64,000 bases of DNA from Guillardia theta CCMP2712 (Eukaryota > Protista > Cryptophyta). The notes under the pieces were generated by a model, which was given only the letters and a program-made list of their open reading frames with translations, was not told where the DNA came from and made no database searches. Positions 3,487-46,328 of the stretch are shown here, in pieces (positions within the stretch are counted from its first letter, which is position 1; each line of letters begins with the position of its first letter). Where the stretch lies: positions 526,167-590,166 of the forward strand of contig NW_005434664.1 of NCBI RefSeq assembly GCF_000315625.1, in the 5' to 3' direction. The position numbers were made by a program, and so were the translations under genes.

Positions 3487-3604
3487 GCTTCAGAGGAACC
3501 AGAGTACTATATTGCTTATAGTTGGCCAGGTATTGCTAATACCCTCTAAAGCGTTCATACAGCAGTTTGTCACTACTGGTGAACCGTAGGAGGGACTGGA
3601 GGCG

Positions 3605-25724: not shown

Positions 25725-26719
25725 TCAATTTCCTTTGCATTCTTTCCAGCTGCACATCGAGTTACGAAACAAGTTAACCGAACATAATCATCTCACCATT
25801 CACTGTCAAAAAGATTGCAATCCCCGCAGGACCAGGGATATTGCTTGTTGCGAATGTGGATGTAAGGGAAGGTGTTCTTGGCAGGGTCCATGTGCGGATC
25901 GTTGTGATGGTCCATGTGCACCTTGTACTCCCACGCTCCGACAACACCGACAAGCACGAGGCCGCCAAGGGAGACGTTCTTCCAGAAATCAGACTCTGCA
26001 AGATACGTCAGTGCTGCATCTTTCTTGTAATGGTTGAACCGTCAGCTCCGCCATGAGCGAAACTACGAGAAGCCTTGGGTGCTGTACGAGGGATGCGGAG
26101 AGCCTTGCTTGCCACGGAGGCTAGCAGCAATGTTATTTCTTGAAGCATGCAAGGAAAAGTGTGGATACGAAGACCAAGAATTCAAGAGGAGGCAGCAGCG
26201 GGCAAGAAATTCAGTGGTTGACAAGTTGATGGGGCAAGAGTCGGAAGAAGAAAGACAAAAATGAGGTTTGAGGAGATGGAAATTCGGCCTGTTCAAGGGA
26301 AGGGAGAGGAAGGAATACGAAGAGGGTTGATGGCGAACTCGGAGCAGAGGAGCAAGTAGCGAATAGCGAGGATCGAAGTGCACGGGGGCGAGGGGAGTTA
26401 TTATGCTGTGAGGGTAGAGCGAGAAGTGAGGAGCGGGTAGGGGAGAATTTTGAGAAAGGTCAGAAGAGGCGAGGGGAGAATGGAGAGAGAGGAAGGCAGA
26501 TATCGAAGGGCGAGGAGGAGAGGGAGAGGAGAAAAGAGGGGGAGAGTGAGGTGGGAGGGGAAGGTAGATGTGGGAGGGTGATGAGGAGAGGGAGAGGAGA
26601 GCGGGGAGGGGAAGGCGGGTGCAGGAGGGAGAGGAGGAGAGGGAGAGGAGAAAGGGGCGAGGAGAGGAGAGTGGTTTTGGCATTCTGTGCAAGGGGTCGC
26701 ACTCACAGAGGCGCTGCAT
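25725..26719 (-). CDS. COX6A: Cytochrome c oxidase subunit 6A (COX13) with mitochondrial presequence
   Basis: Not in the ORF track. Spliced product MQRLS|SVASKALRIPRTAPKASRSFAHGGAD|ESDFWKNVSLGGLVLVGVVGAWEYKVHMDHHNDPHMDPAKNTFPYIHIRNKQYPWSCGDCNLFDSE|CWKECKGN*. It has the W-K-x-S TM start and the PYxxIRxKxxPW-GD-LF COX6A motif. Exon 1 = 26719-26707; intron 1 = 586 nt. Confidence 0.85.
26400..26672. repeat. GA-rich polypurine tract inside COX6A intron 1
   Basis: (GAG/GGA/AGG)n low-complexity sequence read directly. Confidence 0.8.
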
Positions 26720-27152
26720 TGCGGCGAGGGCGTTAATTAGGGTTACTAGGACCCAGGTCCTAGATATAGTATAACCCACACCACCCACACGTTCCACCCT
26801 ACCCTCTATGCTTGACCCTGGTCCATCGCTAAACAAAGTCCCTTGGGGTGGGTAGTTCATATGTCAGTTGAAGACCTATGATACGGGGGTGGGGGTGGGT
26901 GATGATACAACTCTTCATCATCACCCCCCTTGTTTCCGTCAAAAAGTACCCCTCCTTGTACCCCTACCCCCTACCTTGGACAGATATGGACCCCTGTAGG
27001 AGCCACACGTAGTGGACGCTGACACCACTAGTCTACCATCTTTCGCGGTTCACATCATTTTTCCAAGCAGTTACGTAGCGGTTATTTGGAGGTTACTTGG
27101 CGGTTTTCAGGGCGCATCGAACGGACTGCCATCATTCGCGAACGAGATAGGC

Positions 27153-28297
27153 ATGGCGGGTTTGAACATGGCGCTGGCGATCGCGGCGATCGTGGGGACG
27201 AACTATGTTTGCTCCATGGTCGGTCTCAGCAATACAGTTACCATCATTCTCCAGGTGCGCAACAGCTGACTCTGCTCCCGCTCCTGCTACTCCTATAACC
27301 GCCCACTGAGCTCCCCCCCACCTTCCGTCTCGTTTGTGCCTGTTGCTGATGATGTATGTCGCGAGGCTGGTCAGGAATGTTGAGGCACCTGAGCCTTTGC
27401 ATCTTCCTTGTGTTTTCATTCGCTACATATTCTCTATGTTGTTCGAAAGCCTGCTGATCACTTTGACCGCGTCTTATGCCTTCAAACAGTTCCTGGTCGC
27501 CTTGGTTCTACCTCGGTCTGTGTGCCTATCTCAAGGTTGAGGGTAGAGTGACATCCTGTTAGCATCATCGCTCCCTTCTTTGCTAAGAAGATTGTCGGAT
27601 CTCCCGCTCCTCCGGTGAAAGACCTTCAGATCTTTCAGGTTGACCATCGCAATGTTGATTGTAAGGCAATAACGGGATGCCAGGGCTCGGAAGTTGAACT
27701 TGGAAATGGAAAAGTGACAGTCGTTGAGTTCTGGGCAACATGGTGTCCTCCTTGTCGCAAGTCGATCCCGTGAGTCAAGTACAGAACTGTCAAGTCAGCC
27801 AGACGCTGACTTGAAGGTGTAGTCACCTCAACAGCATCTTCGACAAGTATAAGTCCAAGGTGTTCAAGTCATGATCGACCAAACCGTGGATGACGCGAGT
27901 ACCTCAGGACGTTCAGATCATCGGGATATCCTCCGAGTCGGACAAGACCATCAAGGTCTTGAGTCCTCTCGCGGCAGACACGCTTGACAAGTCTGTAGGC
28001 CTTCTGCGACAAGAACAAGGAAGTGGCTCCCAAGTACACTATCGGCTTGGACACCACCGGGAGTGTGTCTCGAGGATATCCTGTTCGCTCTTCTTGCTCT
28101 TCTGCGCATGTCCTCTCATCCTTAGCCCGCAGGTGGAAGGAATTCCAGCAGCCTTTGTCATCGACAAGAAGGGCATCGTCGCCTGGCAGGGTCACCCGAT
28201 GTCGGACATGGAACAGGTCACGTGACGTGCAAGGGGTTTCGCCCTGAGTCGCCTTGGATTGCAGGCTATCAACGACGCTCTGAAGAGCGAATCATGA
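27153..28297 (+). CDS. Membrane-anchored TlpA/redoxin-family thiol-disulfide oxidoreductase
   Basis: Hydrophobic N-terminus, VGSPAPP, VVEFWATWCPPCRKSIP|HLN (CPPC active site), VEGIPAAFVIDKKGIVAWQGHP; stop at 28295-28297. Confidence 0.9.
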
Positions 28298-31200
28298 AGA
28301 AGGCATCCTACCATAACAAGCCAAGGATCATCGGATTAGCTAGGCAGGATGATTGGCAGCTCACTAACCTCTTGTCGTAGAGCAGTTTTAAGTTTGCTTG
28401 ACTTCACGTGACACTCGAATCAAAGGTGGTGTCAGGCTCAGCTCGCCCTGCAAACCATCACACTATACGCGCTATCACACACTGTCAAGGCTACCTTTGC
28501 CCTGTTGATGACATCAGCTGAGTCAACTTGCGGCCCGCGCAACATCCGAGTACATCCCTGGGATATGCGACCGTGCCAGAGTGGGTCTGAGCAGTACGAG
28601 GAGATTCCACCTGGACTGGTTCATGCCGACTCGGAGGCTGTGCCTGATGATGCAGGACGCTACGAGGTACACATCCCTGGCATGCCGATCTGCCAGTGTC
28701 CGACCGAATGTGATGGATGTCAGCGCGAGCTCGATCCCTCCGTTGCTGCACATCATCTCCAGACCTGCAAGCGTCGAACCTCCAAGCTTCCTATTGCGCA
28801 TGACAACCTTACTCGAACAGTCAAGGCGATGCTCAGCGAAGCCGGCCTCTCAGCATGGGCACAAAACCAAGGCCGACATCCTCATCCCTCGGGCCTGGGA
28901 TGATGGCGGACGTTACGTTGGTCCACCCCACATTGAGAGCTCGACACCACTGGGGTGCTTGCTGCTGGTCGGCGAGCTCGCCTGCCTCGGGCCGATCAGT
29001 GCCGCACAGCCCCGGTCCCTGGGCATTGATTCAAGGCGTCGCCGCCGTCACGGGTGGTGTTGGTCTCGGCTACCGCTGACTCGGAGGCTAGTGAGGAGGA
29101 CCTGGATGCGTCACCTCGAGCGGTACCGTGCTCCTGTGCCCAGCCTCCCTCTTTCCGCTTCTCGCTGTGCGCTGTGTGCAAGCAGGTTTAGCTTGTTCCT
29201 GCTTTGTTTTGCAGGCTTGAGGCACTTTTTACCTTCTGCAAGTAAATCTTCGTCCGCTGCCCCCGGCGGACCCCCGGCGGACGCCCGGGCAGCGCCGGCT
29301 CCTTGTCGGCGGCTGCCCTTTCTCCGTCCGTGGCCGCCAGCTTTGCGGCGGCGGCGGACGTCTCGACTGATCAGTCGGCTGCCTCCGGGTATCGCGTCTA
29401 GTAAGGGGGTTTCATTTCGGACGTCCCCTTCTGCTGCTTGTTACCCCTCCTACAGGCTTGCTTGATTGCTTGACCCTTCGGCTGCTTGTCTGCGCGGCTT
29501 CGCGCGTGGGCTGGCGGTGGTCGAAGATTTACGGTACCGGGTCTGCTGCCAGATGCCCGAAGTAAATCCTATCATGGCACGTCCGCGGTGCTGGTTACGA
29601 AGTTTTGGTCTTATTTTGTTGTGTGTGATTATGCAGCTTCTCGCTGTGGAGCTGTGTGCATGCAGGTTTAGCTTGTTCCTGCTTTGTTTTGCTTGAGGCA
29701 CTTTTTACCTTCTCATGATGAAGGGCGATATCCACATCCCTGGAATCCGCGATCGAGGGTCCGAGCACTGCCGTACGAGGGCTTGATGGCGCACGTGACG
29801 TTGGTCCACCCTTACATTGGTAGCTCTCCCGACCTGACCAAGTGGGGGGAGGTCAACCTCGACGCCCTCCATGTTGCAGCGTCTGAGAAGATTCGCAAAC
29901 ACCGCGCTGCATATGCTATGACTACTCCTCCTCGAGCGTTCATCCCTCTTGCCATCTCGACGGACGGTACCCTGCCTCCGCTTCATCTGGTATCTGGTGG
30001 ACATCATTGCTCAGCGCTCGATGCCTCTTGAGGATGCGGCGTTTGGTCGGCAGTCGGCACTTTGTGCCTGATGACGGACCTGCTGCTGAGGTCTTGGCTC
30101 GCAAACGCGCCGCCACCTATCAGCGCCTCACTATGCAGCTGACGCTGGAGGCGCTCCTGTCTGGTGCGAGGCGCATGACGCCCTTGCGGGCGCAAGCACT
30201 CCTCGAGCCAGAGGACAGCTCCTCCTCGGACTTTGTCGAGTCGCCCGAGGAGGAGTCTCGGAGGCTAGCGAGGAGGACTACCTCGAGCGGTACCGTGTTC
30301 CTGTGTCCAGCCTCCCTTCCGTCCGCTGCCCCAGGCGGACCCCCGGGCAACGCCGGCTCCTTGTCGGCGGCCGCGCCCTTTCTCCGTCCGCGGCCGCCCG
30401 CTTTGTGGCGGCAGCGGACGTCTCGCCGGACTGACAGTGGTCAGTCGGCTGCCTCCGGGTATCGCGTCTAAGGGATTTTATTCCTCCTGCATGCTCCTGC
30501 TGCTTGTTGCTTGATTGCTTGACCCTTAGGCTGCTTGTCTGCGCGGCTTCGCGCTTGGGCTGGCGGTGCCGCGTCTGGGTGCCAGCAGTGCTGGTTCTTT
30601 TCGGGCTTGTGTTTTGTGTGTGATTGTGCAGCTTCTCGCTGTGTGCCTGGAGCCCAAGCGCGAAGCCGCGCAGACAAGCAGCCTAAGGGTCAAGCAATCA
30701 AGCAACAAGCAGCAGGAGCATGCAGGAGGAATAAAATCCCTTAGACGCGATACCCGGAGGCAGCCGACTGACCACTGTCAGTCGAGACGTCCGCTGCCGC
30801 CACAAAGCGGGCGGCCGCGGACGGAGAAAGGGCAGCCGCCGACAAGGAGCCGGCGTTGCCCGGGGATCCGCCTGGGGCAGCGGACGGAGGGAGGCTGGAC
30901 ACATGAACACGGTACCGCTCGAGGTAGTCCTCCTCGCTACCTCGCTAGCCTCCGAGTCAGCGGTAGCCGAGTCAGTGGTAGCCGCCCGTGACGGCGGCGA
31001 CGCCGCGGCCGCGAATGTCCAGTAAATCCTAGCAGCCCAAGGACCGGCGTGACCCGACCGATGCCGGGGAGGAAGCAGGCGAGCTCGGACCAGCAGCAAG
31101 CACCCCAGTGGTGTCGAGCTCTCCGGAGGCACCCGACGTCACAGTACAGGATTCACAGTGAGGGACGGAGACGCCTCCGAGTCGCCAGCTCCGCGCCCAT

Positions 31201-34160
31201 CATCGGGGCCACTCGAAGGGTTTCCCCCATCGGAGTCGGAGACCTCCGGCGAAGACTCCTCGGGCGACTCGACAAAGTCCGAGGAGGAGCTGTCCTCTGG
31301 CTCGAGGAGTGCTTGCGCCCGCAAGGGCGTCATGCGCCTCGCACCAGACAAGAGCGCTTCCAGCGTCAGCTGCATGGTGAGGCGCTGATAGGTGGCGGCG
31401 CGTTTGCGAGCCAAGACCTCAGCAGCAGGTCCGTCATCAGGCACGAAGTGCCGACCAAACGCCGCATCCTCAAGAGGCATCGAGCGCTGAGCAATGATGT
31501 CCGCCAGATACCAGATGAAGCGGAGGGTGTCAGGATGCAGGGTACCGTCCGTCGAGATGGCAAGAGGGATGAACGCTCGAGGAGGAGTAGTCATAGTCAT
31601 GGCATATGCAGCGCGATGTTTGCGAATCTTCTCAGACGCTGCAACATGGAGGGCGTCGAGGTTGACCTCCCCCCACTTGGTCAGGTCGGGAGAGCTACCA
31701 ATGTAAGGGTGGACCAACGTCACGTCCGCCATCAAGCCCCAGCTTGTTCCTGCTTTGTTTTGCTTGAGGCACTTTTTATCTTCTGCCAGTAAATCCTATA
31801 TATAGCCCTCTGGGTGCCAGCAGTGCTGGTTCTTTTCGGGCTTGTGTTTTGTGTGTGTTTGTGCAGCTTCTCGCTGTGGACTGTGTGCCTGCCGGTTCAG
31901 CTTGTTCCTGCTTTATTTTGCTTGAGGCACTTTTTACCTTCTGCCAGAAAATCCTATACCTCTCGTACTGCTCGGACCCTCGGTCGCGGATTCCAGGGAT
32001 GTGGATATCGCCCTTCATCTTGCGGCCATGAGGATGGGAGGGTACCTGCCGTCGAGAACGAGGATCCCCCACTGTATCGATGACGCTCTGAAGACCAGCT
32101 TCGTTCAGCATCGACCGAATCGTACGAGTAAGGTTGTCATGCGCCGTGGGAAGCTTGGAGGATCGGCGTTTGTAGGTCTGGAGATGATGTGCAGCAACGG
32201 AGGGATCGAGCTCGCGCTGACATCCATCACATTCCGTCGGACACTGGCAGATCGGCATGCCATGGAGATAGCAGTCGAGCATCTGAGCATAGCGGTGCGG
32301 GAAGGCCTTGCTTTGCCTTGAGGGGGTAGTAGCTCGAGACTCGCATCGGAGAGTGGCTCAGGTCTCGCTCAGGAAAATGAGCGAAGATGGTAGACTGCAA
32401 GACCCTATCCTGCGACTTGAGCGAGTGTGTCCTGCGGCTGTGCAAGGTGAGGATATCACGCTGCTGATCGGTCAGCGCAGCGCGAGCATGCACATGGCGA
32501 GGGAAGACGCGCATGACAAGAGGGGTCACATTTCGCTGCGCAGGGGGAGGAATGAAGTGCTCATGAGACGAGTCGACGAGAGCGCGCAAACCAGGGATGT
32601 GTACTTTTTGTGTGTGTTTGTGCAGCTTCTCGCTGTGGACTGTGTGCCTTCCGGTTCAGCTTGTTCCTGCTTTGTTTTGCTTGAGGCACTTTTTACCTTC
32701 TGCCAGTAAATCCTGTGTGTGTACCACAGATGCCGAGGGGCGTCCTGCGGATGTGTACCACAGATGCCGGGGGGCGTCCTGCGTCATCAGGCACAGCAGG
32801 TACAGGATTTACTGGCAGAAGGTAAAAAGTGCCTCAAGCAAAACAAAGCACTGGGAACAAGCTGAACCGGCAGGCACACAGTCCACAGCGAGAAGCGGCA
32901 CAAACACACACAAAACACAAGCCCGAAAAGAACCAGCACTGCTGGCACCCAGACGCGGCACCGCCAGCCCAAGCGCGAAGCCGCGCAGACAAGCAGCCTA
33001 AGGGTCAAGCAATCAAGCAACAAGCAGCAGGAGCATGCAGGAGGAATAAAATCCCTTAGACGCGATACCCGGAGGCAGCCGACTGACCACTGTCAGTCCG
33101 GCGAGACGTCCGCTGCCGCCACAAAGCGGGCGGCCGCGGACGGAGAAAGGGCAGCCGCCGACAAGGAGCCGGCGCTGCCCGGGTGTCCGCCTTGGGCAGC
33201 GGACGGAGGGAGGCTGGACACAGGAACACGGTACCACGGCGCATGACAACCTTACTCGTACGATTCGGTCGATGCTGAACGAAGCTGGTCTTCAGAGCGT
33301 CATCGATACAGTGGGGGATCCTCGTTCTCGACGGCAGGTACCCTCCCATCCTCATGGCCGCAAGATGAAGGGCGATATCCACATTCCTGGAATCCGCGAT
33401 CGAGGGTCCGAGCAGTACGAGGGCTTGATGGCGCACGTGACGTTGGTCCACCCTTACTTTTTATCTTCTGCCAGTAAATCCTATAACTCCCTTACATTGG
33501 TAGCTCTGCCGACCTGACCAAGTGGGGGGAGGTCAACCTCGACGCCCTCCATGTTGCAGCGTCTGAGAAGATTCGCAAACACCGCGCTGCATATGCCATG
33601 ACTACTCCTCCTCGAGCGTTCATCCCTCTTGCCATCTCGACGGACGGTACCCTGCATCCTGACACCCTCCGCTTCATCTGGTATCTGGCGGACATCATTG
33701 CTCAGCGCTCGATGCCTCTTGAGGATGCGGCGTTTGGTCGGCACTTCGTGCCTGATGACGGACCTGCTGCTGAGGTCTTGGCTCGCAAACGCGCCGCCAC
33801 CTATCAGCGCCTCACCATGCAGCTGACGCTGGAAGCGCTCTTGTCTGGTGCGAGGCGCATGACGCCCTTGCAGGCGCAAGCACTTCTCGAGCCAGAGGAC
33901 AGCTCCTCCTCGGACTTTGTCGAGTCGCCCGAGGAGTCTTCGCCGGAGGTCTCCGACTCCGATGGGGGACACCCTTCGAGTGGCCCCGACGATCGGCGCG
34001 GAGCTGGCGAGGCGTCTCCGTCCCTCACTGTGACGTCGGGTGCCTCCGGAGAGCTCGACACCACTGGGGTGCTTGCTGCTGGTCCGAGCTCGCCTGCTTC
34101 CTCCCCGGCATCGGTCGGGTCACCAGTAAATCCGATCAGTAAATCGGGTGCCAGTAAATC

Positions 34161-34350
34161 CGACAGTCCCTCCTTGTGCTTCAGCAAGAAGATCAGTGAA
34201 AGATTCAGCCTTGTAGATGCCGCGGAGCTCAGTAGTGTCCGTACCGCCCGATGAAGGTCACCCGCAGTGAACTGATGAATCGCCAACTGTCTTTGGCGCT
34301 CGCTCGCAGAGGTGAGGGACAGCGTAGGTCGCGGCGGAAGATGTTGAAGG
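34161..34350 (-). pseudogene. Fragment of the pre-RT region of the CRE-like ORF
   Basis: Encodes ...RQLAIHQFTAGDLHRAVRTLLSS..., resembling the conserved G-x-x-x-x-A-x-x-x-L region upstream of RT in RLE retroelements. Recurs on + at ~43750-43936. Confidence 0.5.
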
Positions 34351-35024
34351 GCGATATCCACCGTCCCTGGAATCCGCGATCGAGGGTCCGAGCAGTACGA
34401 GGGCTTGATGGCGGACGTGACGTTGGTCCACCCTTACATTGGTTTGCTTGAGGCACTTTTTACCTTCTGCCAGTAAATCCTATGTACCTGTATAGCATAG
34501 GATTTACTGGCAGAAGATAAAAAGTGCCTCAAGCAAAATAAAGCAGGATCAAGCTAAACCTCCAGGCACACTGCGCACAGCGAGAAGCTGCACAATCACA
34601 CACAAAACACAAGCCCGAAAAGAACCAGCACTGCTGGCACCCAGACGCGGCACCGCCAGCCCAAGCGCGAAGCCGCGCAGACAAGCAAGCAACAAGCAGC
34701 CGACGTCACAGTGAGGGACGGAGACGCCTCGCCAGCTCCGCGCCGATCGTCGGGGCCACTCGAAGGGTGTCCCCCATCGGAGTCGGAGACCTCCGGCGAA
34801 GACTCCTCGGGCGACTCGACAAAGTCCGAGGAGGAGCTGTCCTCTGGCTCGAGAAGTGCTTGCGCCTGCAAGGGCGTCATGCGCCTCGCACCAGACAAGA
34901 GCGCTTCCAGCGTCAGCTGCATGGTGAGGCGCTGATAGGTGGCGGCGCGTTTGCGAGCCAAGACCTCAGCAGCAGGTCCGTCATCAGGCACGAAGTGCCG
35001 ACCAAACGCCGCATCCTCAAGAGG

Positions 35025-36548
35025 TGACGGAATACAAGTTTGTTAGACTTGTACTAGTCCAAAGTCACGCAGATGTCACATCGACCTTAGTTGTAACAAG
35101 ACAGTTTTTGCTCAAGACCGAGTTTAATGCACACAAATCCAGAATTGAGGAGCACATGAGAGATAGACTGTATGCTAGGATGTGAAACCCAAGCATCCAG
35201 ACATGAGGGGACCTTAGCAAGACGGCTAGGAAGGCCTCCTCTTCGTCACATGTACTACATTGCCGCCTGCCACGTAAGTCGTCTTGGTTTACAGGAGAGT
35301 TTTTGTTAACTCGGCGCTATCTGACTGGCACGGCTGGCATACGTTCCATCCTCCCCCCGAGTTTCTGAAATAGTACGTTACATCGGACGTCAGAAAGTCA
35401 CTCAACCAAGAGAATGTCAGCAGATCCAAGTCAAGATACGATGATACAACGTCAAGTTCACAGTCATGCTGAGTGGGAAATAACCATTCAAGGATTGTCC
35501 ATTCTGAAGAAGATTTTCATGCAGGGCTGTTAGATGTGCGGCACAGAGATAAGGGGAGATGCCTGGCGAGCGGATGCAATGACGAGAGATGGAGGATAGG
35601 ATAAGAGAGTCTGAAGAGAGAGAAGATAAGAGAGATAGAGAGGGAGAGAGAGAGTGCCCGCCGGCATTTGAAGACCAAAAGATAAATTTTTGAACCGTAA
35701 AGAACTTGTGACCAGAGATTGCTGCCGCAAGATTGGAACATCCGTTTCAAGGCATTTGAAGATTGTTGTGCAGTAGTACCTTGTTCGCCGATCCAGAAGT
35801 AGCTCCAGTTATGCATGCCACAGCCTAGCTCCATGACATGAAACTTCCGCCAGATCTCCTGGGAGTTCCATTTGATCCTACTCAAAGATCAAGAAAATAA
35901 GAATCGAATCAGCTTCAAGTGCGTTTCCACACGGTTAAGCAGATATTCGACCGACCAATCTGGCTGGGGAAAGGCTTGTTTTTCCTATTCGAAGATCAAT
36001 CAAACAGATTGAGGCTGAGATGAGAGGCCTAAACAACTTGCGGCTAGAGAGAGAGCCTGATTGAAGAGAAGAGTCATCCGAATGTGTAAGGCTTGATAGA
36101 AAGTTGCATGAATTTTCAACAGTAACGGAAAACAATACCAAGAAAGAAAAAACTCCAGTAAACAATTCAACTAACCAAATATAAGATCAACATGATTGAG
36201 CATGTAATCGGGGCCCATAACCGACGGAATACAAGTTTGTTAGACTTGTACTAGTCCAAAGTCACGCAGATGTCACATCGACCTTAGTTGTAACAAGACA
36301 GTTTTTGCTCAAGACCGAGTTTAATGCACACAAATCCAGAATTGAGGAGCACATGAGAGATAGACTGTATGCTAGGATGTGAAACCCAAGCATCCAGACA
36401 TGAGGGGACCTTAGCAAGACGGCTAGGAAGGCCTCCTCTTCGTCACATGTACTACATTGCCGCCTGCCACGTAAGTCGTCTTGGTTTACAGGAGAGTTTT
36501 TGTTAACTCGGCGCTATCTGACTGGCACGGCTGGCATACGTTCCATCA
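35025..36548 (-). mobile_element. Non-autonomous Ty1/copia-type LTR retrotransposon (TRIM-like, 1524 bp)
   Basis: Two 327-bp LTRs (35025-35351, 36222-36548), apparently identical except at their inner terminal bases. Outer ends TG...CA; 5-bp TSD AGAGG (35020-35024, 36549-36553). PBS GGTTATGGGCCC (36222-36211) and PPT GGGGGGAG (35358-35351). No gag/pol ORF in the ~870-bp interior. Confidence 0.92.
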
Positions 36549-37372
36549 AGAGGCATCGAGCGCTGAGCAATGATGTCCGCCAGATACCAGATGAAGCGGA
36601 GGGTGTCAGGATGCAGGGTACCGTCCGTCGAGATGGCAAGAGGGATGAACGCTCGAGGAGGAGTAGTCATGGCATATGCAGCGCGATGTTTGCGAATCTT
36701 CTCAGACGCTGCAACATGGAGGGCGTCGAGGTTGACCTCCCCCCACTTGGTCAGGTCGGCAGAGCTACCAATGTAAGGGTGGACCAACGTCACGTCCGCC
36801 ATCAAGCCCTCGTACTGCTCGGACCCTCGATCGCGGATTCCAGGAATGTGGATATCGCCCTTCATCTTGCGGCCATGAGGATGGGAGGGTACCTGCCGTC
36901 GAGAACGAGGATCCCCCACTGTATCGATGACGCTCTGAAGACCAGCTTCGTTCAGCATCGACCGAATCGTACGAGTAAGGTTGTCATGCGCCGTGGGAAG
37001 CTTGGAGGATCGGCGTTTGCAGGTCTGGAGATGATGTGCAGCAACGGAGGGATCGAGCTCGCGCTGACATCCGGTGGCATCACATTCCGTCGGACACTGG
37101 CAGATCGGCATGCCATGGAGATAGCAGTCGAGCATCTGAGCATAGCGGTGCGGGAAGGCCTTGAGGGGGTAGTAGCTCGAGACTCGCATCGGAGAGTGGC
37201 TCAGGTCTCGCTCAGGAAAATGAGCGAAGATGGTAGACTGCAAGACCCTATCCTGCGACTTGAGCGAGTGTGTCCTGCGGCTGTGCAAGGTGAGGATATC
37301 ACGCTGCTGATCGGTCAGCGCAGCGCGAGCATGCACATGGCGAGGGAAGACGCGCATGACAAGAGGGGTCAC
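36549..37372 (-). pseudogene. CRE-like element C-terminal domain (CCHC zinc knuckle + RLE endonuclease), continuing across the LTR insertion to ~34700
   Basis: ORF 36503..37387: CQCPTECD..CQRELDPSVAAHHLQTC...AHDNLTRTIRSML...KGDIHIPG...MADVTLVHP...KIRKH...FIPLAISTDG. Confidence 0.85.
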
Positions 37373-38871
37373 ATCGGTTCTGCACACCGTCGACTCGCGA
37401 CGAAGCTTGCTTTGGCAGCGATTCGCTCATTTCTTGACCAGCACTTCCTCTCGTCTCACCCTCGAGCGATTCAGTTTGGGCTCGATCGAGACGGCTGTCT
37501 GAAGTTCTCGCAAACCGCGTCAGCGCTCCTGCCCCTTCACGCTCGCGGTGATGATGAGGATGTTGCCAACCCCACAGTGCTGGTGAGTTTGGATGCAAAG
37601 AACGCCTTCAACTCCCTCGACCGCCAGGCTCTCTTCGATGCAATCGAGGGACGTGCGAGTCGCGACTACTTTGATGGGAGCATCACTGAAGGCGCAAGCT
37701 TGCCCTCTTGCGAGCATCTCCGTTTGTTCGCCCGGGCCTCCTACCTCTCCAGCTACTATGGAGACTCTGCTGACCTTCGACTCTTTCACAAAAGTCAGTC
37801 AGCCTCCGTTCAGTGTACCTCGGGCGTCTGTCAGGGCGATGTCCCCTCCAGCGTGTTTTTCTGCCACAGTATCCACCCCCTGCTCCTCCATATCGCAGAG
37901 CTTTTTCCCTCTGTTCGAGTCTTGGCCTATGCTGACAACGTCGTGCTTGTCGGTCCACTCGAGGATGCCGTTGCAGCTACGTCCGCTATGAAGAAGTACA
38001 TGGTGGCTGATCTGAAGCTAGAGATTCAACCTCGCGAGTCGAAAGTTTACATCCCCTCCTGGCATCAACACCCTGATCTCTCGCAGCTGAAGAAGAGCCT
38101 TAAGCGCCGTCTCAAGACTCAACTTCTTCACTTCGAGGTCGTCACTGGCGGGATTACACTGGCTTGGCGGCCTGCCTATCGGCACGGATGGATTTCATGC
38201 TAGTCAGCTCCGAGCGAAGGTTTCTACCCTCAACGAAGAGCTCTCGAAGCTCGGGCTCGTCCAGCATGGCTTCATGTTCAAGACGCTGGTGAGGGCGAGC
38301 CATCTCCAGAAGCTGCGCTCAGGCTTCTTCCTCCAGGGGTCATCTCCGTTTCTCCCGCGGGTCCAATCACAGATTCGTCGCTTTGACCTCTCTGTCCACC
38401 TGGCGCTTGAGAAATACCACCGCTGGCCTTCCTCGCAGTACCTCGCCGCGCATCCCGACCTGCTAGAGTTTGCGAGGTTCAAGCGGGAGCTTCCGCATAG
38501 TCGGGGAGGGGACGAGTTCACGCCCTCTGAGGGTCTACACCCCGCTGTTTACTATACGGCTATCGCTCGCTTCCTCGCCGCTTGGTACTCTGACCAGCCC
38601 ATGTCCCGGATGTTGCCCTCTCCTCATAGCCTGGACGTTCACTGCTCGAGATCTCTCCGTGCCCAGAAGCATCCTCTGGCGACCTTCTTCGTTGAGGCGC
38701 ACGACTTCGTCCATAATGCTGGAGCGATCCTCTACCGTCGTGTCAAGGCTCCTGCACCGGCTGCAGATGGCGCGGCGATCCCACCTGCCCCGGCTGCTGT
38801 GCCTGATGACGCAGGACGCCCCCCGGCATCTGTGGTACACATCCCTGGTTTGCGCGCTCTCGTCGACTCGT
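37373..38871 (+). pseudogene. Reverse transcriptase domain of the CRE-like retrotransposon (5'-truncated, frameshifted)
   Basis: RT motifs IQFG, VSLDAKNAFNSLDR, GVCQGDVPSSVFF, LAYADNVVLVG, LEIQPRESKVY. A 4-nt TGGC duplication at ~38160-38168 breaks LAGLPIGTDGF. The copy resumes after the TIR element at 41272. Confidence 0.88.
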
Positions 38872-41271
38872 CATTACGTTCGCTTATAGCTTTAGTTAAT
38901 TCTCGATCCTGTCCTTCTGGTACTAATCATGGACACGGCTCTAATTGCAATTTGTACCAGTCCTTCCCCCCCTGATGGCGCCTGGGGGTCTTCTGCCCTT
39001 GCCTGGAGTAGACCCCACCCTCACTCTCCCATGGGAAAAGAGTAGGTCGGGTGGGCGACTTGGCTGGGGCAAGGGTAGGTTGTGAACCTTTTATTCCAAG
39101 TATTTGCATGCAGAAATTTGTATCGGCGGCGTGCTATTCTTAGATTCAAACTGTACTGCATGACGACAATAAAATCAATTCTACACGCCTTCGTGGTACA
39201 AGAACAGTACCGAAAATCCTATCGACCCACCCATGCTTTTCTCTGTTGGATACAGCAGGCATAACCCCTGGTCAGAGGCGTGTATTCAAAATTTGAACTT
39301 TAACGTAAGGTACCCACCCTTGCTCATGTGTCATAATTCCCTAAAACAGGAGGGTGGTCGATACGGCACTCAATCTTGGGATCAGGGGGTGGGTGGTAAG
39401 GAATCCCCAACCCATCCCTCCCTCTCGATGCATGATGAATGTTGCCCATCCAGCGACCATCAGGCTACTGAAAGATGCCAAGACCAACATGGTGACAAAG
39501 GTCAAACATGAGAATCAAAGATGGTGGGTTTGAGTGGTATGCATGCTCACTTTGCAACTCTGATACTTTAGTGACAGATCCTGCTTCCCGGCGAGCAGTC
39601 ATCGTGCATGGATCAGGATGCCCAAAGCTCTGCCCTTTTCAACGCTGCACTTGCACATATTACATGTGGTGATGCACTCAGGTTGGCATTGCTACTCCAC
39701 ATACAGGTTGATGACAGACGTTATATTGTCTAGATTGTTTAGAACCCCAATTCCAGCTTGAACAACATTGTTGAAGACGTGCAAACTGTTAGCGGCAATC
39801 TGTTTCTCAAAAACAGATCCCATCACGAATCACGGTGAGGCTGAGATCAAGTGAAGATTGATCTTCTCATGTTTGTGTATCAGGTAAGCATCGTGCATCC
39901 ACATGAACAAGCAACACGGCATTTTTTTCCTTGGCACCTTCCTTCCTAGCAGAACAATGAACACATGTAAGATATTACATGCTCGTGACGATATCGACAG
40001 CAGACAAGTTTTACGACAAAAGAAAATTATGTAGGGATGATCTAAGTGTATCGAATACTTGCTGTTGGTGCTCAACATGTGGAGAAAAGACGATTTGAAT
40101 GAATTCATGAGAATTCATGACAGTGGATCACTTCTGAAGCAACGTATCTCAATGTTGCATACATAGCTTGACTTCATATCCTTACATCGTGAGAGTTGAC
40201 AACCTGTATGGAGTGAGCTTTTCTGCGTCACATCATCATGCTGAGATCTGCATGCAACTTTCCAGCGCAGTTGCAGAGTCATGTGCACAGGAGTTCTCTT
40301 GCAAGTAAACTAATTCCAAATCATGCTTAATGAAATGCGTACCGTCTGTTGATGCCTTGACCGAGAACAATCGTGTTACAGAGTATTGCTACTCGCTGCA
40401 TGCGAAGCTGCTACTGTCTACAACACTCTAGAGTTCTGAACATCATATCAGTCCACAGCATGCAGGTTGCAAGGTTCCGAACGAACCGCGCTTCAAAGCA
40501 GGGCCATGAGCTTTGAATCGTGCTTGATAGAACACGTACACTCAGCTCAGTTCATGCTTTCGTGACCCTAGTTGGATGTTCATACACCTTGCCAATGCCC
40601 GTGAAACATGTTGCCGCTCCCATTCAAATGTATACTGTAAATCTGAGGCACAAAATTTCTAACATCAAATATCTTGAACTATGCAAAATCAAAATCCTTG
40701 ATTACACTATGATGAGGCAAGAGCAGGATGCTCGTTGTCCCATCTTGTTTGTGAGGGCACGAGTGAAGGTTGAGCTGCTTTGACAAACAGCACTGGATAT
40801 CTAGTGCAATACTTTACATCTCAAGCATTTGTTTATTGATAAAACATAACATTGTCGACTATGCGAATGAAAAATCATCACAGCAACACTTGGATGGTGC
40901 TTGATTCTGAACTTGCAAGATTAGATTACGATAATGATGATTGTATTCACAAAAGCAACACAACGACCGTGCTATCAAGATATCTCATCGACATTAACTT
41001 CGAATCTTGATGGTCTATCCGTCTTCGTCATTGATTAGCGTTGTGCATATCCCTGCACCATCGCGAGAGGGCTGAAGGGAGGGGGGGGGGGCTCGGGGGG
41101 TCTACCATCATAAAATGCTGGACTCTTAAAAGTATTGTAATTTGTACCATTAAAACAAATAAATTAGTATTACAGGACCCACCCCTGTGCATTTCCCTCT
41201 TCAAACTCTACCACGCCTGTATCAGAGCCCCACAGGAAAAAGAACCCCAAAACCAACAAGCGAACGTAATG
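38872..41271. mobile_element. 2.4 kb TIR-bounded insertion (putative non-autonomous DNA transposon), no TSD
   Basis: 14-bp perfect TIRs CATTACGTTCGCTT (38872-38885) / AAGCGAACGTAATG (41258-41271). Interrupts host ACTCGT^CTCATG, whose empty site is visible in the copy at ~32560-32575. AT-richer interior with no long ORF. Confidence 0.8.
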
Positions 41272-44200
41272 CTCATGATGAGCACTTCATTCCTCCCCGG
41301 AGTCCCCCTGCGCAGCGAAATGTGACCCCTCTTGTCATGCGCGGCGCGTCTTCCCTCGCCATGTGCATGCTCGCGCTGCGCTGACCGATCAGCAGCGTGA
41401 TATCCTCACCTTGCACAGCCGCAGGACACACTCGCTCAAGTCGCAGGATAGGGTCTTGCAGTCTACCATCTTCGCTCATTTTCCTGAGCGAGACCTGAGC
41501 CACTCTCCGATGCGAGTCTCGAGCTACTACCCCCTCAAGGCCTTCCCGCACCGCTATGCTCAGATGCTCGACTGAACTTCGGAATGTGATGGATGTCAGC
41601 GCGAGCTCGATCCCTCCGTTGCTGCACATCATCTCCAGACCTGCAAACGCCGATCCTCCAAGCTTCCCACGGCGCATGACAACCTTACTCGTACGATTCG
41701 GTCGATGCTGAACGAAGCTGGTCTTCAGAGCGTCATCGATACAGTGGGGGATCCTCGTTCTCGACGGCAGGTACCCTCCCATCCTCATGGCCGCAAGATG
41801 AAGGGCGATATCTGCTTGACCCTTAGGCTGCTTGTCTGCGCGGCTTCGCCGCGCTTGGGCTGGCGATGCCGCGTCTGGGTGCCAGCAGTGCTGGTTCTTT
41901 TCGGGCTTGTGTTTTGTGTGTGTTTGTGCAGCTTCTCGCTGTGGACTGTGTGCCTGCCGGTTCAGCTTGTTCCTGCTTTGTTTTGCTTGAGGCACTTTTT
42001 ATCTTCTGCCAGTAAATCCTATATACTTGTGCCTGATGACGGACCTGCTGCTGAGGTCTTGGCTCGCAAACGCGCCGCCACCTATCAGCGCCTCACCATG
42101 CAGCTGACGCTGGAAGCGCTCTTGTCTGGTGCGAGGCGCATGACGCCCTTGCGGGCGCAAGCACTTCTCGAGCCAGAGGACAGCTCCTCCTCGGACTTTG
42201 TCGAGTCGCCCGAGGAGTCTTCGCCGGAGGTCTCCGACTCCGATGGGGGACACCCTTCGAGTGGCCCCGACGATCGGCGCGGAGCTGGCGAGGCGTCTCC
42301 GTCCCTCACTGTGACGTCGGGTGCCTCCGGAGAGCTCGACACCACTGGGGTGCTTGCTGCTGGTCCGAGCTCGCCTGCTTCGGTCCCCGGCATCGGTCGG
42401 GTCACGCCGGTCCTTGGGCATTGCCGCGGCGTCGCCGCCGTCACGGGCGGCTACCACTGACTTGGCTACCGCTGACTCGGAGGCTAGCGAGGAGGACTAC
42501 CTCGAGCGGTACCGTGTTCATGTGTCCAGCCTCCCTCCGTCCGCTGCCCGGGCCTGGCGGACCCCCGGGCAGCGCCGGCTCCTTGTCGGCGGCTGCCCTT
42601 TCTCCGTCCGCCGGGCCGCCCGCTTTGTGGCGGCAGCGGACGTCTCGACTGACAGTGGTCAGTCGGCTGCCTCCGGGTATCGCGTCTAAGGGATTTTATT
42701 CCTCCTGCATGCTCCTGCTGCTTGTTGCTTGATTGCCTGACCCTTAGGCTGCTTGTCTGCGCGGCTTCGCGCTTGGGCTGGCGCTGCCGCGTCTGGGTGC
42801 CAGCAGTGCTGGTTCTTTTCGGGCTTGTGTTTTGTGTGTGTTTGCCAGTTGTGCAGCTTCTCGCTGTGGACTGTGTGCCTGCCGGTTCAGCTTGTTCCTG
42901 CTTTGTTTTGCTTGAGGCACTTTTTACCTTCTGCCAGTAAATGTTGCAGCGTCTGAGAAGATTCGCAAACACCGCGCTGCATATGCCATGACTACTCCTC
43001 CTCGAGCGTTCATCCCTCTTGCCATCTCGACGGACGGTACCCTGCATCCTGACCGTACACCCTCCGCTTCATCTGGTATCTCGCGGACATCATTGCTCAG
43101 CGCTCGATGCCTCTTGAGGATGCGGCGTTTGGTCGGCACTTCGTGCCTGATGACGGACCTGCTGCTGAGGTCTTGGCTCGCAAACGCGCCGCCACCTATC
43201 AGCGCCTCACTATGCAGCTGACGCTGGAGGCGCTCTTGTCTGGTGCGAGGCGCATGACGCCCTTGCGGGCGCAAGCACTTCTCGAGCCAGAGGACAGCTC
43301 GCCGGAGGTCTCCGACTCCGATGGGGGACACCCTTCGAGTGGCCCCGACGATCGGCGCGGAGCTGGCGAGGCGTCTCCGTCCCTCACTGTGACGTCGGCT
43401 GCTTGTTGCTTGCTTGTCTGCGCGGCTTCGCGCTTGGGCTGGCGGTGCCGCGTCTGGGTGCCAGCAGTGCTGGTTCTTTTCGGGCTTGTGTTTTGTGTGT
43501 GATTGTGCAGCTTCTCGCTGTGCGCAGTGTGCCTGGAGGTTTAGCTTGATCCTGCTTTATTTTGCTTGAGGCACTTTTTATCTTCTGCCAGTAAATCCTA
43601 TGCTATACAGGTACATAGGATTTACTGGCAGAAGGTAAAAAGTGCCTCAAGCAAACCAATGTAAGGGTGGACCAACGTCACGTCCGCCATCAAGCCCTCG
43701 TACTGCTCGGACCCTCGATCGCGGATTCCAGGGACGGTGGATATCGCCCTTCAACATCTTCCGCCGCGACCTACGCTGTCCCTCACCTCTGCGAGCGAGC
43801 GCCAAAGACAGTTGGCGATTCATCAGTTCACTGCGGGTGACCTTCATCGGGCGGTACGGACACTACTGAGCTCCGCGGCATCTACAAGGCTGAATCTTTC
43901 ACTGATCTTCTTGCTGAAGCACAAGGAGGGACTGTCGGATTTACTGGCAGAAGGTAAAAAGTGCCTCAAGCAAAACAAAGCAGGAACAAGCTAAACCTCC
44001 CACAAGAGAAGTTCCCTGCGTCGCCTGCCTTTGGAAGTGCTGACCACTGTCAGTCGAGACGTCCGCTGCCGCCACAAAGCGGGCGGTCGCGGACGAAGAA
44101 AGGGCAGCCGCCGACAAGGAGCCGGCGTTGCCCGGGGGCCCGGGTCCGCCTGGGGCAGCGGACGGCCCGTGACTCCGGGAGGCTGGACACAGGAACACGG

Positions 44201-46328
44201 TACCGCTCGAGGTAGTCCTCCTCGCTAGCCTCCGAGTCAGCGGTAGCCGAGACCAACACCGCCCGTGACGGCGGCGACGCCGCGGCAATATCAAGCAACA
44301 AGCAGCAGGAGCATGCAGGAGGAATAAAATCCCTTAGACGCCGCGATACCCGGAGGCAGCCGACTGACCACTGTCAGTCGAGACGTCCGCTGCCGCCACA
44401 AAGCGGGCGGCCGCGGACGGAGAAAGGGCAGCCGCCGACAAGGAGCCGGCGCTGCCCGGGTGTCCGCCTGGGGCAGCGGACGGAGGGAGGCTGGACACAT
44501 GAACACGGTACCGCTCGAGGTAGTCCTCCTCGCTAGCCTCCGAGTCAGCGGTAGCCAAGTCAGTGGTAGCCGCCCGTGACGGCGGCGACGCCGCGGCAAT
44601 GCCCAAGGACCGGCGTGACCCGACCGATGCCGGGGAGGAAGCAGGCGAGCTCGGACCAGCAAAGTGCCGACCAAACGCCGCATCCTCAAGAGGCATTGAG
44701 CGCTGAGCAATGATGTCCGCCAGATACCAGATGAAGCGGAGGGTGTCAGGATGCAGGGTACCGTCCGTCGAGATGGCAAGAGGGATGAACGCTCGAGGAG
44801 GAGTAGTCATGGCATATGCAGCGCGATGTTTGCGAATCTTCTCAGACGCTGCAACATGGAGGGCGTCGAGGTTGACCTCCCCCCACTTGGTCAGGTCGGC
44901 AGAGCTACCAATGTAAGCCGGGGTGGACCAACGTCACGTCCGCCATCAAGCCCTCGTACTGCTCGGACCCTCGATCGCGGATTCCAGGAATGTGGCCCAA
45001 GGACCGTGCGGCGTGACCCGACCGATGCCGGCCGGGGCCCGCCGGGGGACTCCCGGAAGCAGGCGAGCTCGGACCAGCAGCAAGCACCGTGCCGCCACCC
45101 CACTCCGGAGGCACCCGACATCACAGTGAGCCTGGGACGGAGACGCCTCGCCAGCTCCGCGCCGGTCGTCGGCGCGGCCCTCAGTCGGAGACCTCCGGCG
45201 AAGACTCAGGCTCCTCGGGCGACTCTCACTCGACAAAGTCCGAGGAGGAGCTGTCCTCTGGCTCGAGAAGTGCCCGGGCCGGGCCGGGCGTCATGCGCCT
45301 CGCACCAGACAAGAGCGCCTCCAGCGTCAGCTGCACGGATTTACTGGCAGAAGGTAAAAAGTGCCTCAAGCAAAACAAAGCAGGAACCCTAAGGGTCAGG
45401 CAATCAAGCAACAAGCAGCAGGAGCATGCAGGAGGAATAAAATCCCTTAGACGCGATACCCGAAGGCAGCCGACTGACCACTGTCAGTCGAGACGTCCGC
45501 TGCCGCCACAAAGCGGGCGGCCGCGGACGGAGAAAGGGCAGCCGCCGACAAGGAGCCGGCGTTGCCCGGGTGTCCGCCTTGGGCAGCGGACGGAGGGAGG
45601 CTGGACACAGGAACACGGTACCGCTCGAGGTAGTGGGGGATCCTCGTTCTCGACGGCAGGTACCCTCCCATCCTCATGGCCCGGCGCAAGATGAAGGGCG
45701 ATATCCACATTCCTGGAATCCGCGATCGAGGGTCCGAGCAGTACGAGGGCTTGATGGCGGACGTGACGTTGGTCCACCCTTACATTGGTAGCTCTGCCGA
45801 CCTGACCAAGTGGGGGGAGGTCAACCTCGACGCCCTCCAGGCTGGACACAGGAACACGGTACCGCTCGCTAGCCTCCGAGTCAGCGGTAGCCAAGTCAGT
45901 GGTAGCCGCCCGTGACGGCGGCGACGCCGCAGCAATGCCCAAGGACCGGCGTGACCCGACCGATGCCGGGGAGGAAGCAGCCTGAGGCGAGCTCGGACCA
46001 GCAGCAAGCACCCCAGTGGTGTCGAGCTCTCCGGCCCTGAGGCACCAGGACTCCTGACTCCGCATGCAGGAGGCCGCCGCCGGACTGACCACTGTCAGTC
46101 CGGCGAGACGTCCACTATGGAGTACTGTGTGACTTCAACCACAGTGACTTGAGACTTCAGTGAGCGGGTAGTGAACGGCCGAGTTCCGACTCGCGGCGGG
46201 CCGCCGCGGCGCCGCCCGGCGGCCGGCCGCCCGGGGCGAGGTCACGGTACCGGGTAGTTCTGTCGGAGGCAGGCTTGCTATAGCCGATGAGTAAATCTGG
46301 GAAGAGACATCGGTTGCGAAGAGACACG

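What the first reader, a model, noticed from the sequence alone, without database searches (positions are those of the whole stretch)
28540..46113. Self-targeting CRE-like retrotransposon nest: candidate centromere or heterochromatic landing pad in a cryptophyte-like genome
Seen: a 17.6 kb interval without host genes in an otherwise tightly packed chromosome arm. It is made of one RLE-type non-LTR element in both orientations, with about 18 separate 3' termini (CCAGTAAATCC or its complement; e.g. ~31020, 31790, 31945, 32705, 32805, 33472, 34124-34160, 34471, 34500, 42010, 42935, 43590, 43620, 43940, 45340). No copy is seen elsewhere in the 64 kb. Known: self-inserting retroelements build centromeric clusters in other protists (Zepp/ZeppL in green algae, DIRS-1 in Dictyostelium), and described CRE-clade elements usually target SL-RNA genes, telomeres or microsatellites. 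Inference: this element targets its own copies or their chromatin, and the nest may mark a centromere or TE trap. I know of no defined cryptophyte nuclear centromere.
Basis: partly seen in the sequence, partly recalled or inferred. Interest (0 to 1): 0.88.

Follow-up and report, generated by a model that had tools for sequence, protein, structure and literature searches.

The report
Candidate centromere built by self-nesting retrotransposon
A 17.5-kb gene-free island in the alga Guillardia theta is made of copies of one retrotransposon inserted into each other; each large contig of the genome has exactly one such island, so the islands are good candidates for the still undefined centromeres of cryptophyte chromosomes.

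Summary
Window 28,637-46,116 is a scrambled mosaic of about 40 fragments, in both orientations, of one non-LTR retrotransposon. It carries 17 copies of the 3' end ...CTTCTGCCAGTAAATCC. Two unrelated transposons have also landed in it.

The element encodes a reverse transcriptase followed by a CCHC knuckle and a restriction-like endonuclease. Its profile and its fold both match R2 proteins best. "CRE-like" as a clade could not be tested.

The genome is Guillardia theta CCMP2712. It holds about 850 such termini. Of 365 that I could list, 363 lie in a single cluster per contig, on 88 contigs. Each of the 11 largest contigs has exactly one cluster, 0.4-0.9 Mb from the telomere on the contigs that have one. 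Two related endonuclease-type families and two other transposon families in the same genome are dispersed, so the confinement belongs to this one family.

Insertions hit at least 50 different positions of the element, so targeting is regional, not site-specific.

The best reading is regionally targeted self-nesting at a once-per-chromosome domain, most likely the centromere. This parallels the Zepp/ZeppL clusters of green algae, but with another LINE type in another supergroup. Centromere identity is not shown. First readers of this scan flagged the same kind of nest in six other windows of this genome.

The parts
28637..35024 (.). Left part of the nest: about 22 fragments of the RLE-type LINE in both orientations. 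The oldest copies (74-88% identity to the reference copy) lie at the outer edge.
35025..36547 (+). Foreign insertion: a 1.5-kb non-autonomous LTR-type element. It has 325-bp identical terminal direct repeats, TG...CA ends and a 5-bp target duplication AGAGG. It belongs to a dispersed family.
36503..37387 (-). Open frame of 294 aa in a minus-oriented copy (36,546-37,374): CCHC knuckle plus the restriction-like endonuclease domain and the C-terminus of the element's protein.
37372..38872 (+). 5'-truncated copy carrying the reverse transcriptase core (YADN motif). It corresponds to reference positions 1818-3299.
38873..41270 (.). Foreign insertion: a 2.4-kb dispersed repeat with 13-bp terminal inverted repeats. 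It interrupts the RT-bearing copy.
41278..41812 (+). Continuation of the interrupted RT-bearing copy (reference positions 3302-3850).
41813..46116 (.). Right part of the nest: about 18 fragments in both orientations. Old copies (79-88% identity) lie at the outer edge.
31019..45350 (.). Span holding the 3' termini (...CTTCTGCCAGTAAATCC, usually followed by TATA or TATG). On the + strand: 31019, 31786, 31944, 32703, 33471, 34123, 34151, 34470, 42009, 42934, 43588. On the - strand: 32805, 34500, 43618, 43937, 45337. One older terminus at 29,236 lies outside this span.
34149..34799 (.). One arm of a 651-bp perfect inverted duplication. The other arm is at 43,299-43,949.
27251..28424 (+). Flanking host gene, not part of the nest. 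It is spliced (eight GT..AG introns) and its poly(A) site is at 28,424, about 210 bp from the first element fragment.

Best explanation
The interval is an island built by repeated target-primed reverse transcription of one non-LTR retrotransposon into a domain already made of its own copies.

The element encodes a single long protein. In order it has a conserved N-terminal region without a zinc finger, a CAG-repeat-coded poly-Q stretch, a reverse transcriptase, a CCHC knuckle and a PD-(D/E)XK restriction-like endonuclease.

Most insertions are heavily truncated at the 5' end, so 3' ends pile up. New copies land inside the island in either orientation and at many positions, which tends to leave older copies at the edges.

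Genome-wide, the family is confined to one such island per large contig. The target is therefore a once-per-chromosome domain, most likely the centromere or its chromatin, and the islands are candidate regional centromeres of the Guillardia theta nuclear chromosomes.

Shown: the anatomy, the nesting, the enzyme type, the genome-wide distribution, and that the confinement is specific to this family. Inferred: active regional targeting. Inferred and untested: centromere identity.
For: Anatomy
- Coverage of a natural long copy rises from 1 to 80 toward its 3' end in 11 sampled clusters.
- 70 of 77 distinct 3' junctions are followed within 20 nt by the element's own sequence, 42 in the same and 28 in the opposite orientation, at more than 50 positions.
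- Clear nested cases have about 7-bp target duplications, for example at 33,471.

Enzyme
- Pfam RVT_1 matches with E about 1e-5.
- The family profile hits R2 proteins first (E 2.9e-9). The same HMMER alignment also lines up the CCHC and endonuclease stretch with R2, but that stretch on its own is not significant (i-Evalue 7.2).
- H134, D178 and D198 are invariant, and C102, C107, C123 and K230 nearly so.
- The six best Foldseek matches of the C-terminal model are R2 structures.

Distribution
- There are 850 termini in the genome and 0 in the reversed control.
- 363 of 365 listed termini lie in the one main cluster of their contig, on 88 contigs.
- C1 to C11 each have exactly one cluster (Poisson P about 1e-5).
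- Clusters lie 0.4-0.9 Mb from telomeres.

Specific to this family
- Two related endonuclease-type LINE families, a small LTR family and a TIR family are dispersed outside the clusters.

Activity
- Inner copies are 97-100% alike, edge copies 74-88%.
- Sense-strand RNA reads fall on nest copies.

Precedent
- Zepp and ZeppL LINE clusters occur one per chromosome, nested, at 61% against 53% GC (PMC3446292, PMC8226300). Here the values are 60.5% against 51.9%.
Against: - There are no CENH3, kinetochore, Hi-C or genetic data.
- Contigs are not chromosomes: none was shown to run from telomere to telomere, and 16 of the 60 largest contigs have no sampled cluster.
- Only 43% of the termini could be listed.
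- There are two small secondary sites, at C21:590,291 and C90:300,470.
- The nest abuts an expressed gene with no wider gene-poor zone. That is unusual for many regional centromeres, though not for small algal ones.
- The insertion-site data cannot separate recognition of the element's own sequence from chromatin targeting.
- Many clusters hold assembly gaps.
Confidence: 0.6

Rival explanations
1. Self-sequence homing without centromere function. The element's protein or RNA recognises DNA of its own family, so each founder copy grows into a nest. The islands would be neutral transposon sinks, and their one-per-contig pattern would reflect history or another once-per-chromosome feature.
For: 91% of 3' junctions abut the element's own sequence. 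Some sites are hit repeatedly, for example five independent junctions within reference positions 3905-3922, and 15 observed against 4.3 expected in 3900-4099. Tail-to-tail and tandem mini-copies lie 4-24 nt from older termini.
Against: Random founder events should give contigs with none, two or three islands. Instead each of the 11 largest has exactly one. Within an island about 85-90% of the DNA is the element, so 91% self-flanks is no enrichment beyond the region. No single target motif emerges, and the protein has no N-terminal zinc finger.
Confidence: 0.25
2. Random insertion followed by selection. The element inserts anywhere, and in this gene-dense genome only copies in harmless gene-free islands survive.
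For: The genome is compact, with a host gene ending about 210 bp from the nest. Such nests are gene-free.
Against: Other transposons persist dispersed on the arms: related endonuclease-type LINEs with open frames of about 1,350 aa, a small LTR family with hundreds of candidate sites, and a TIR family. 363 of 365 termini are in clusters that make up about 1% of the genome. Even copies of 25-60 nt, which would be harmless in intergenic DNA, are seen only in the nests.
Confidence: 0.07
3. Assembly artefact. The nest would be a collapse or chimera of dispersed copies, made by the assembler.
For: Many clusters contain N gaps or lie at contig ends. The window holds a 651-bp perfect inverted duplication. 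Short-read contigs shatter inside the nest.
Against: The window's nest is gap-free. An independent DNA data set matches 26,500-28,703 without a difference and breaks only where the repeat starts. Nested junctions with target duplications, and a host copy that continues across two foreign insertions, are biological signatures. The same pattern recurs on 88 contigs.
Confidence: 0.03

Closest known systems
Zepp (Coccomyxa, Chlorella) and ZeppL (Chlamydomonas) LINE clusters at putative or mapped centromeres
   Same: Nested clusters made mostly of 3' ends, due to 5' truncation and insertion into existing copies. Strictly or nearly one cluster per chromosome. Sizes of 1.5-42 kb. GC-richer than the genome (61% against 53% there, 60.5% against 51.9% here). 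The family is absent from the arms (PMC3446292, PMC8226300).
   Different: Zepp and ZeppL are L1-type elements. Here the endonuclease is a C-terminal restriction-like one with a CCHC knuckle. The 3' end is a fixed sequence plus TATA or TATG, with no poly(A). The host is a cryptophyte, not a green alga. Centromere location in Chlamydomonas is backed by genetic maps; here nothing backs it yet.
R2 retrotransposon (solved structures 9nl3, 9dou, 8gh6, 8ibw)
   Same: Same domain order: RT, then CCHC, then a PD-(D/E)XK endonuclease. R2 is the best sequence-profile hit and the best fold hit. Both have a defined 3' end without poly(A).
   Different: R2 inserts at one site of the 28S rRNA gene and has N-terminal zinc-finger and Myb domains. 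Here no rRNA or other RNA gene lies in or near the nests, insertion sites are many, and no N-terminal zinc finger is present. Identity to R2 is about 15%.
   Same: Early-branching non-LTR elements with a restriction-like endonuclease and targeted insertion (from my own knowledge, not tested).
   Different: The known members target spliced-leader RNA genes or telomeric repeats. Here the target is the element's own island. Phylogenetic placement was not tested, and the named relatives found are unannotated proteins of Cafeteria, Salpingoeca and Prorocentrum.
Centromere-enriched retroelements of other lineages (Drosophila G2/Jockey-3, poplar Celine)
   Same: A retroelement family enriched at centromeres (PMC6516634, PMC11288735).
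   Different: Those sit in large satellite-rich or repeat-rich centromeres. Here the islands are 2-30 kb, consist almost only of one LINE, and directly abut expressed genes.

Membership tests
Non-LTR retrotransposon (LINE) | Encodes a reverse transcriptase | tested here: met
   Pfam RVT_1 matches at E 5e-6 to 1e-5, just under the gathering score. The family profile hits the R2 RT at E 2.9e-9. A YADN motif is present.
Non-LTR retrotransposon (LINE) | Common 3' end with variable 5' truncation and no terminal repeats | tested here: met
   Coverage of the reference copy rises from 1 to 80 toward the 3' end. Copies as short as 11-60 nt keep the same terminus.
RLE-type LINE (R2-like architecture) | CCHC motif and PD-(D/E)XK endonuclease on the C-terminal side of the RT | tested here: met
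   Alignment A2: C102, C107 and C123 are nearly invariant, H134, D178 and D198 invariant, K230 nearly invariant. The six best Foldseek hits are R2 structures, E 1.5e-4 to 9e-3, followed by other PD-(D/E)XK nucleases. The HMMER alignment also lines up this stretch with R2, but on its own it is not significant (i-Evalue 7.2). The model has a mean pLDDT of 64, with the core at 80-90.
RLE-type LINE (R2-like architecture) | No N-terminal AP-type endonuclease | tested here: met
   Pfam finds only RVT_1 in full-length relatives of 1,300-1,500 aa.
CRE clade | Groups with CRE/SLACS/CZAR in an RT phylogeny | not tested
   No CRE-clade reference sequences could be fetched, and the protein searches returned no named CRE or SLACS relative.
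CRE clade | Site-specific insertion into spliced-leader RNA genes or telomeric repeats (feature recalled from my own knowledge) | tested here: not met
   No Rfam family is found in 134 kb of nests and flanks. The flanks of the termini are the element itself. The clusters lie 0.4-0.9 Mb from TTTAGGG telomeres.
R2 clade | Insertion at a fixed site of the 28S rRNA gene; N-terminal zinc finger and Myb | tested here: not met
   No rRNA match. No C2H2-like motif on the N-terminal side of the RT by pattern search.
Zepp/ZeppL-type centromeric LINE cluster | Nested clusters of mostly 3' ends, one per chromosome, absent from the arms | tested here: met
   Met at contig level only: 363 of 365 termini lie in one cluster per contig, and C1-C11 have one each.
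Zepp/ZeppL-type centromeric LINE cluster | Element belongs to the L1 (Zepp) lineage | tested here: not met
   The endonuclease is restriction-like and C-terminal. This makes it an analogue, not a member.
Centromere | CENH3/CENP-A nucleosomes and kinetochore assembly at the locus | not testable with these tools
   No ChIP, Hi-C or genetic map was available. The 24 listed sequencing runs that hold or accompany this stretch are DNA, RNA or of unrecorded kind, and none is marked as ChIP or Hi-C.
Centromere | Exactly one per chromosome | tested here: inconclusive
   One per large contig, with 16 of the 60 largest contigs lacking one and two minor extra sites. No contig was shown to be a complete chromosome.

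The most novel reading that the evidence does not exclude
These islands are the functional centromeres of the Guillardia theta nuclear chromosomes. The element would be kept there by tethering of its zinc-finger-less N-terminal region to centromeric chromatin. That would give the first defined cryptophyte nuclear centromere and the first LINE with a restriction-like endonuclease that homes to centromeres, convergent with Zepp/ZeppL of green algae.
Probability: 0.5. Interest if true: 0.85.

Novelty: new variant of a known kind. Interest (0 to 1): 0.72.

Why it matters
I found no paper that defines the nuclear centromeres of any cryptophyte. Only PubMed Central open papers and bioRxiv were searched; Repbase was not.

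The islands turn that open question into about 70-90 concrete loci that a single CENH3 ChIP or Hi-C experiment can test.

If confirmed, LINE islands at centromeres would have arisen independently with two unrelated endonuclease types in two eukaryotic supergroups. That would argue that self-nesting retroelements are a general way to build or mark small regional centromeres.

The contrast with dispersed sister families in the same genome offers a natural system for finding what determines regional targeting.

The islands also explain where this assembly breaks, and they can guide scaffolding.

Tried and rejected
- Twin-priming inversion at 37,372. The divergent arrangement of the endonuclease frame (minus strand) and the RT (plus strand) first looked like one inverted copy. 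It is two copies. The plus-strand copy is interrupted by the 2.4-kb TIR element and resumes at 41,278.
- Terminal inverted repeats or a DIRS-like structure. Rejected: in other loci the two segments are collinear in one orientation.
- Direct phmmer of the element's proteins against PDB found nothing. Only the family profile reached R2.
- The search for homologous proteins with the family alignment returned three hits and no named clade.
- The Atlas search of the N-terminal region gave no usable hit.
- Rfam found no RNA gene that could serve as a target.
- A single target motif was not found. The apparent hot spots among same-orientation junctions may in part be 5'-truncation points of neighbouring copies, so I do not claim sequence specificity.
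- The age gradient (old copies at the edges, young ones inside) holds in the window and in about four of the eight other clusters examined, but not in all. It is weak support only.
- Read depth cannot test for collapse, because reads from all islands pile up on any one of them.
- A full census was not possible.
A natural copy, L016:2502-7588, served as the reference.
Full report
**1. What is in the window**

CCAGTAAATCC occurs 14 times exactly, all between 31,019 and 45,347, against 0.01 expected. With the longer 14-mer and up to two mismatches, 15 sites fall in the nest. Two more carry only the 11-mer, giving 17 termini.

Upstream of nearly all of them lies the same roughly 45-nt 3' end. Downstream comes TATA or TATG in about two thirds of cases.

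Self-BLAST and painting with a natural long copy resolve 28,637-46,116 into about 40 fragments of one family in both orientations, at 74-100% identity.

Two foreign pieces sit among them:
- 35,025-36,547 is a 1.5-kb LTR-type element. It has 325-bp identical repeats, TG...CA ends and a 5-bp duplication AGAGG.
- 38,873-41,270 is a 2.4-kb element with 13-bp inverted termini.

Both belong to families dispersed over the genome.

The copy that carries the reverse transcriptase (37,372-38,872) continues at 41,278 behind the second foreign element.

Outside the interval the family is absent from the 64 kb. The nest has no assembly gap.

Host genes flank it:
- A spliced gene with eight small GT..AG introns and a poly(A) site at 28,424.
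- TRAPPC8/9-like and aconitase genes further out.

**2. The element**

I used a natural copy, L016:2502-7588 (contig C77), as the yardstick and built no consensus.

Its 977-codon open frame runs from a poly-Q stretch through an RT to a CCHC motif. An upstream frame holds a conserved N-terminal region.

In the window, the frame 36,503-37,387 on the minus strand keeps the CCHC motif and the whole endonuclease part.

Pfam sees only RVT_1, at E about 1e-5.

An exhaustive HMMER search found 698 relatives. The close ones are Guillardia theta CCMP2712 proteins, which names the genome. The distant ones are mostly unnamed metagenomic proteins, plus Cafeteria and Salpingoeca; a separate alignment search added Prorocentrum.

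A profile of twelve relatives hits R2 proteins first in the PDB (E 2.9e-9). The printed HMMER alignment also lines up the CCHC, H, D, D-x-T and K motifs with R2, though that stretch alone has an i-Evalue of 7.2.

In an alignment of 13 C-terminal regions, H134, D178 and D198 are invariant, and C102, C107, C123 and K230 nearly so.

An AlphaFold model of the window's own frame has a mean pLDDT of 64, with the core at 80-90. Its six best matches are R2 structures, followed by other PD-(D/E)XK nucleases.

No C2H2-like motif lies on the N-terminal side of the RT.

The element is therefore a non-LTR retrotransposon with a restriction-like endonuclease. Its clade is open.

**3. How the nest was built**

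Across the window and ten other clusters, coverage of the reference copy rises from 1 at the 5' end to 80 at the 3' end. This is the mark of target-primed reverse transcription with early termination.

Of 77 distinct 3' junctions, 70 run into the element's own sequence within 20 nt. The target is in the same orientation in 42 and in the opposite orientation in 28, at more than 50 positions.

Clean cases show a target duplication of about 7 bp. At 33,471 a 25-nt copy sits between two copies of CCCTTAC.

Mini-copies of 11-60 nt, tandem termini and tail-to-tail pairs are common.

Sites are not uniform: reference positions 3900-4099 hold 15 junctions against 4.3 expected. But no common motif appears, and some same-orientation cases may be truncation points of a neighbouring copy. 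The targeting is regional, not site-specific.

Edge copies are older than inner ones in the window (89.5, 95.6, 98.0, 94.5 and 92.4% by fifths) and in about half of the other clusters.

RNA reads lie on nest copies in the sense orientation. The flanking gene calibrates the strand. The family is therefore transcribed.

**4. Distribution in the genome**

The 17-mer terminus, with up to one mismatch, occurs 850 times and its reversed control 0 times.

The tool lists only 100 places per pattern, so I partitioned the termini by the base that follows them.

Of 365 distinct listed sites on 88 contigs, 363 fall in the single main cluster of their contig, using 30-kb linkage. The two exceptions are small:
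- 250 bp beside a 100-N gap at C21:590,291.
- A 0.5-kb mini-nest at C90:300,470.

For C1 to C11 (1.10-1.42 Mb each) the list is complete, and each has exactly one cluster. A Poisson process of similar density would give this with P about 1e-5.

Of the 60 largest contigs, 44 have one cluster and 16 have none sampled. About 20 small contigs or contig ends consist of nest, as expected if the assembly breaks there.

Telomeres are TTTAGGG arrays. On the contigs that have one, the cluster lies 0.4-0.9 Mb away.

Element-derived DNA is 60.5% GC against 51.9% in the flanks.

**5. A control inside the same genome**

A six-frame search with a related protein (P0162, 36-38% identical to the nest family) finds two further families with restriction-like endonucleases. 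Several copies have open frames of about 1,350 aa. They sit at places far from the clusters of the same contigs, for example C19:797-800 kb against a cluster at 404-415 kb, and C22:193, 306 and 571 kb against 641-649 kb.

With the dispersed LTR and TIR families, this shows that arms tolerate transposons. The confinement is a property of this one family. That weakens a selection-only account and favours active targeting.

**6. Interpretation**

A domain that occurs once per chromosome, is internal, and attracts one self-nesting LINE has a documented precedent. Zepp in Coccomyxa occurs 'strictly one cluster per chromosome', in clusters of 1.5-42 kb, at 61% against 53% GC (PMC3446292). ZeppL lies at the mapped centromeres of Chlamydomonas (PMC8226300). 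In Chlorella, transposon-rich centromeres predicted from dot plots were confirmed by CENH3 ChIP-seq (PMC11005252).

The present case differs in the enzyme type and in the host lineage.

I found no paper that defines cryptophyte nuclear centromeres. One long-read study mentions centromere-to-telomere fragments without describing them (PMC12220804).

Centromere identity stays an inference, which I put at about 0.5-0.6.

**7. Limits**

- Contigs are not chromosomes.
- 57% of the termini were not listed.
- Many clusters hold gaps.
- Short-read contigs confirm only the left edge of the nest: an independent contig matches 26,500-28,703 exactly and stops there.
- The 651-bp perfect inverted duplication (34,149-34,799 and 43,299-43,949) needs long reads.

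First readers of this scan flagged nests of the same kind in six other windows of this genome. My census covers them only in bulk.

Noticed in passing
window 35025-36547: Small non-autonomous LTR-type element of 1.5 kb. It has 325-bp LTRs that are 100% identical, TG...CA ends and a 5-bp target duplication AGAGG. The family has 369 candidate sites dispersed over the genome at 86-98% identity, including tandem pairs on C137 and C116.
   Followed up: partly
window 38873-41270: A 2.4-kb element with 13-bp terminal inverted repeats. About ten full copies on different contigs are 99-100% identical, which points to very recent DNA-transposon activity. No coding capacity was examined.
   Followed up: partly
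window 34149-34799 and 43299-43949: A 651-bp perfect (100%) inverted duplication inside the nest, 8.5 kb apart. It brackets the RT-bearing copy and both foreign insertions. It is either a real palindromic rearrangement or an assembly artefact.
   Followed up: no
window 27251-28424 (+): An expressed host gene with eight introns, seven of them only 43-53 nt long, and a poly(A) site at 28,424, roughly 210 bp from the nest edge. There is no buffer zone between the gene and the island.
   Followed up: partly
G000 C22:193553-197260, C31:85972-89679, C19:796730-800500: Two further LINE families with restriction-like endonucleases in the same genome, with open frames of 1,350-1,406 aa and no stops. 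They are dispersed on chromosome arms. What they target is unknown.
   Followed up: partly
L022, L024, L028, L032, L034, L039 (contig ends): The telomeres are TTTAGGG arrays. Inside them lies a short subtelomeric tandem repeat of about 19-20 nt (GCCGAAAATAACGGCGCCT and a variant), seen on C2, C4, C12 and C18.
   Followed up: no
window 14000-18000 and 58000-60000: Strong strand asymmetry: GC skew 0.31-0.39 and AT skew 0.31-0.48. The first region coincides with a 1,040-codon open frame (14,480-17,599) that has no Pfam match. The second surrounds the 100-N gap at 59,235-59,334 and degenerate tandem repeats.
   Followed up: no
L016:3504-3800 and relatives: A CAG-repeat (poly-Q) tract of variable length separates the N-terminal region from the RT in the nest family. 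In the long copy examined, L016, the reading frame changes across this tract.
   Followed up: no
runs X7 and X20: Two metagenome runs labelled freshwater and aquatic hold 10-29% of the sampled words of the nest edge, although G. theta is a marine culture strain. This was not examined.
   Followed up: no
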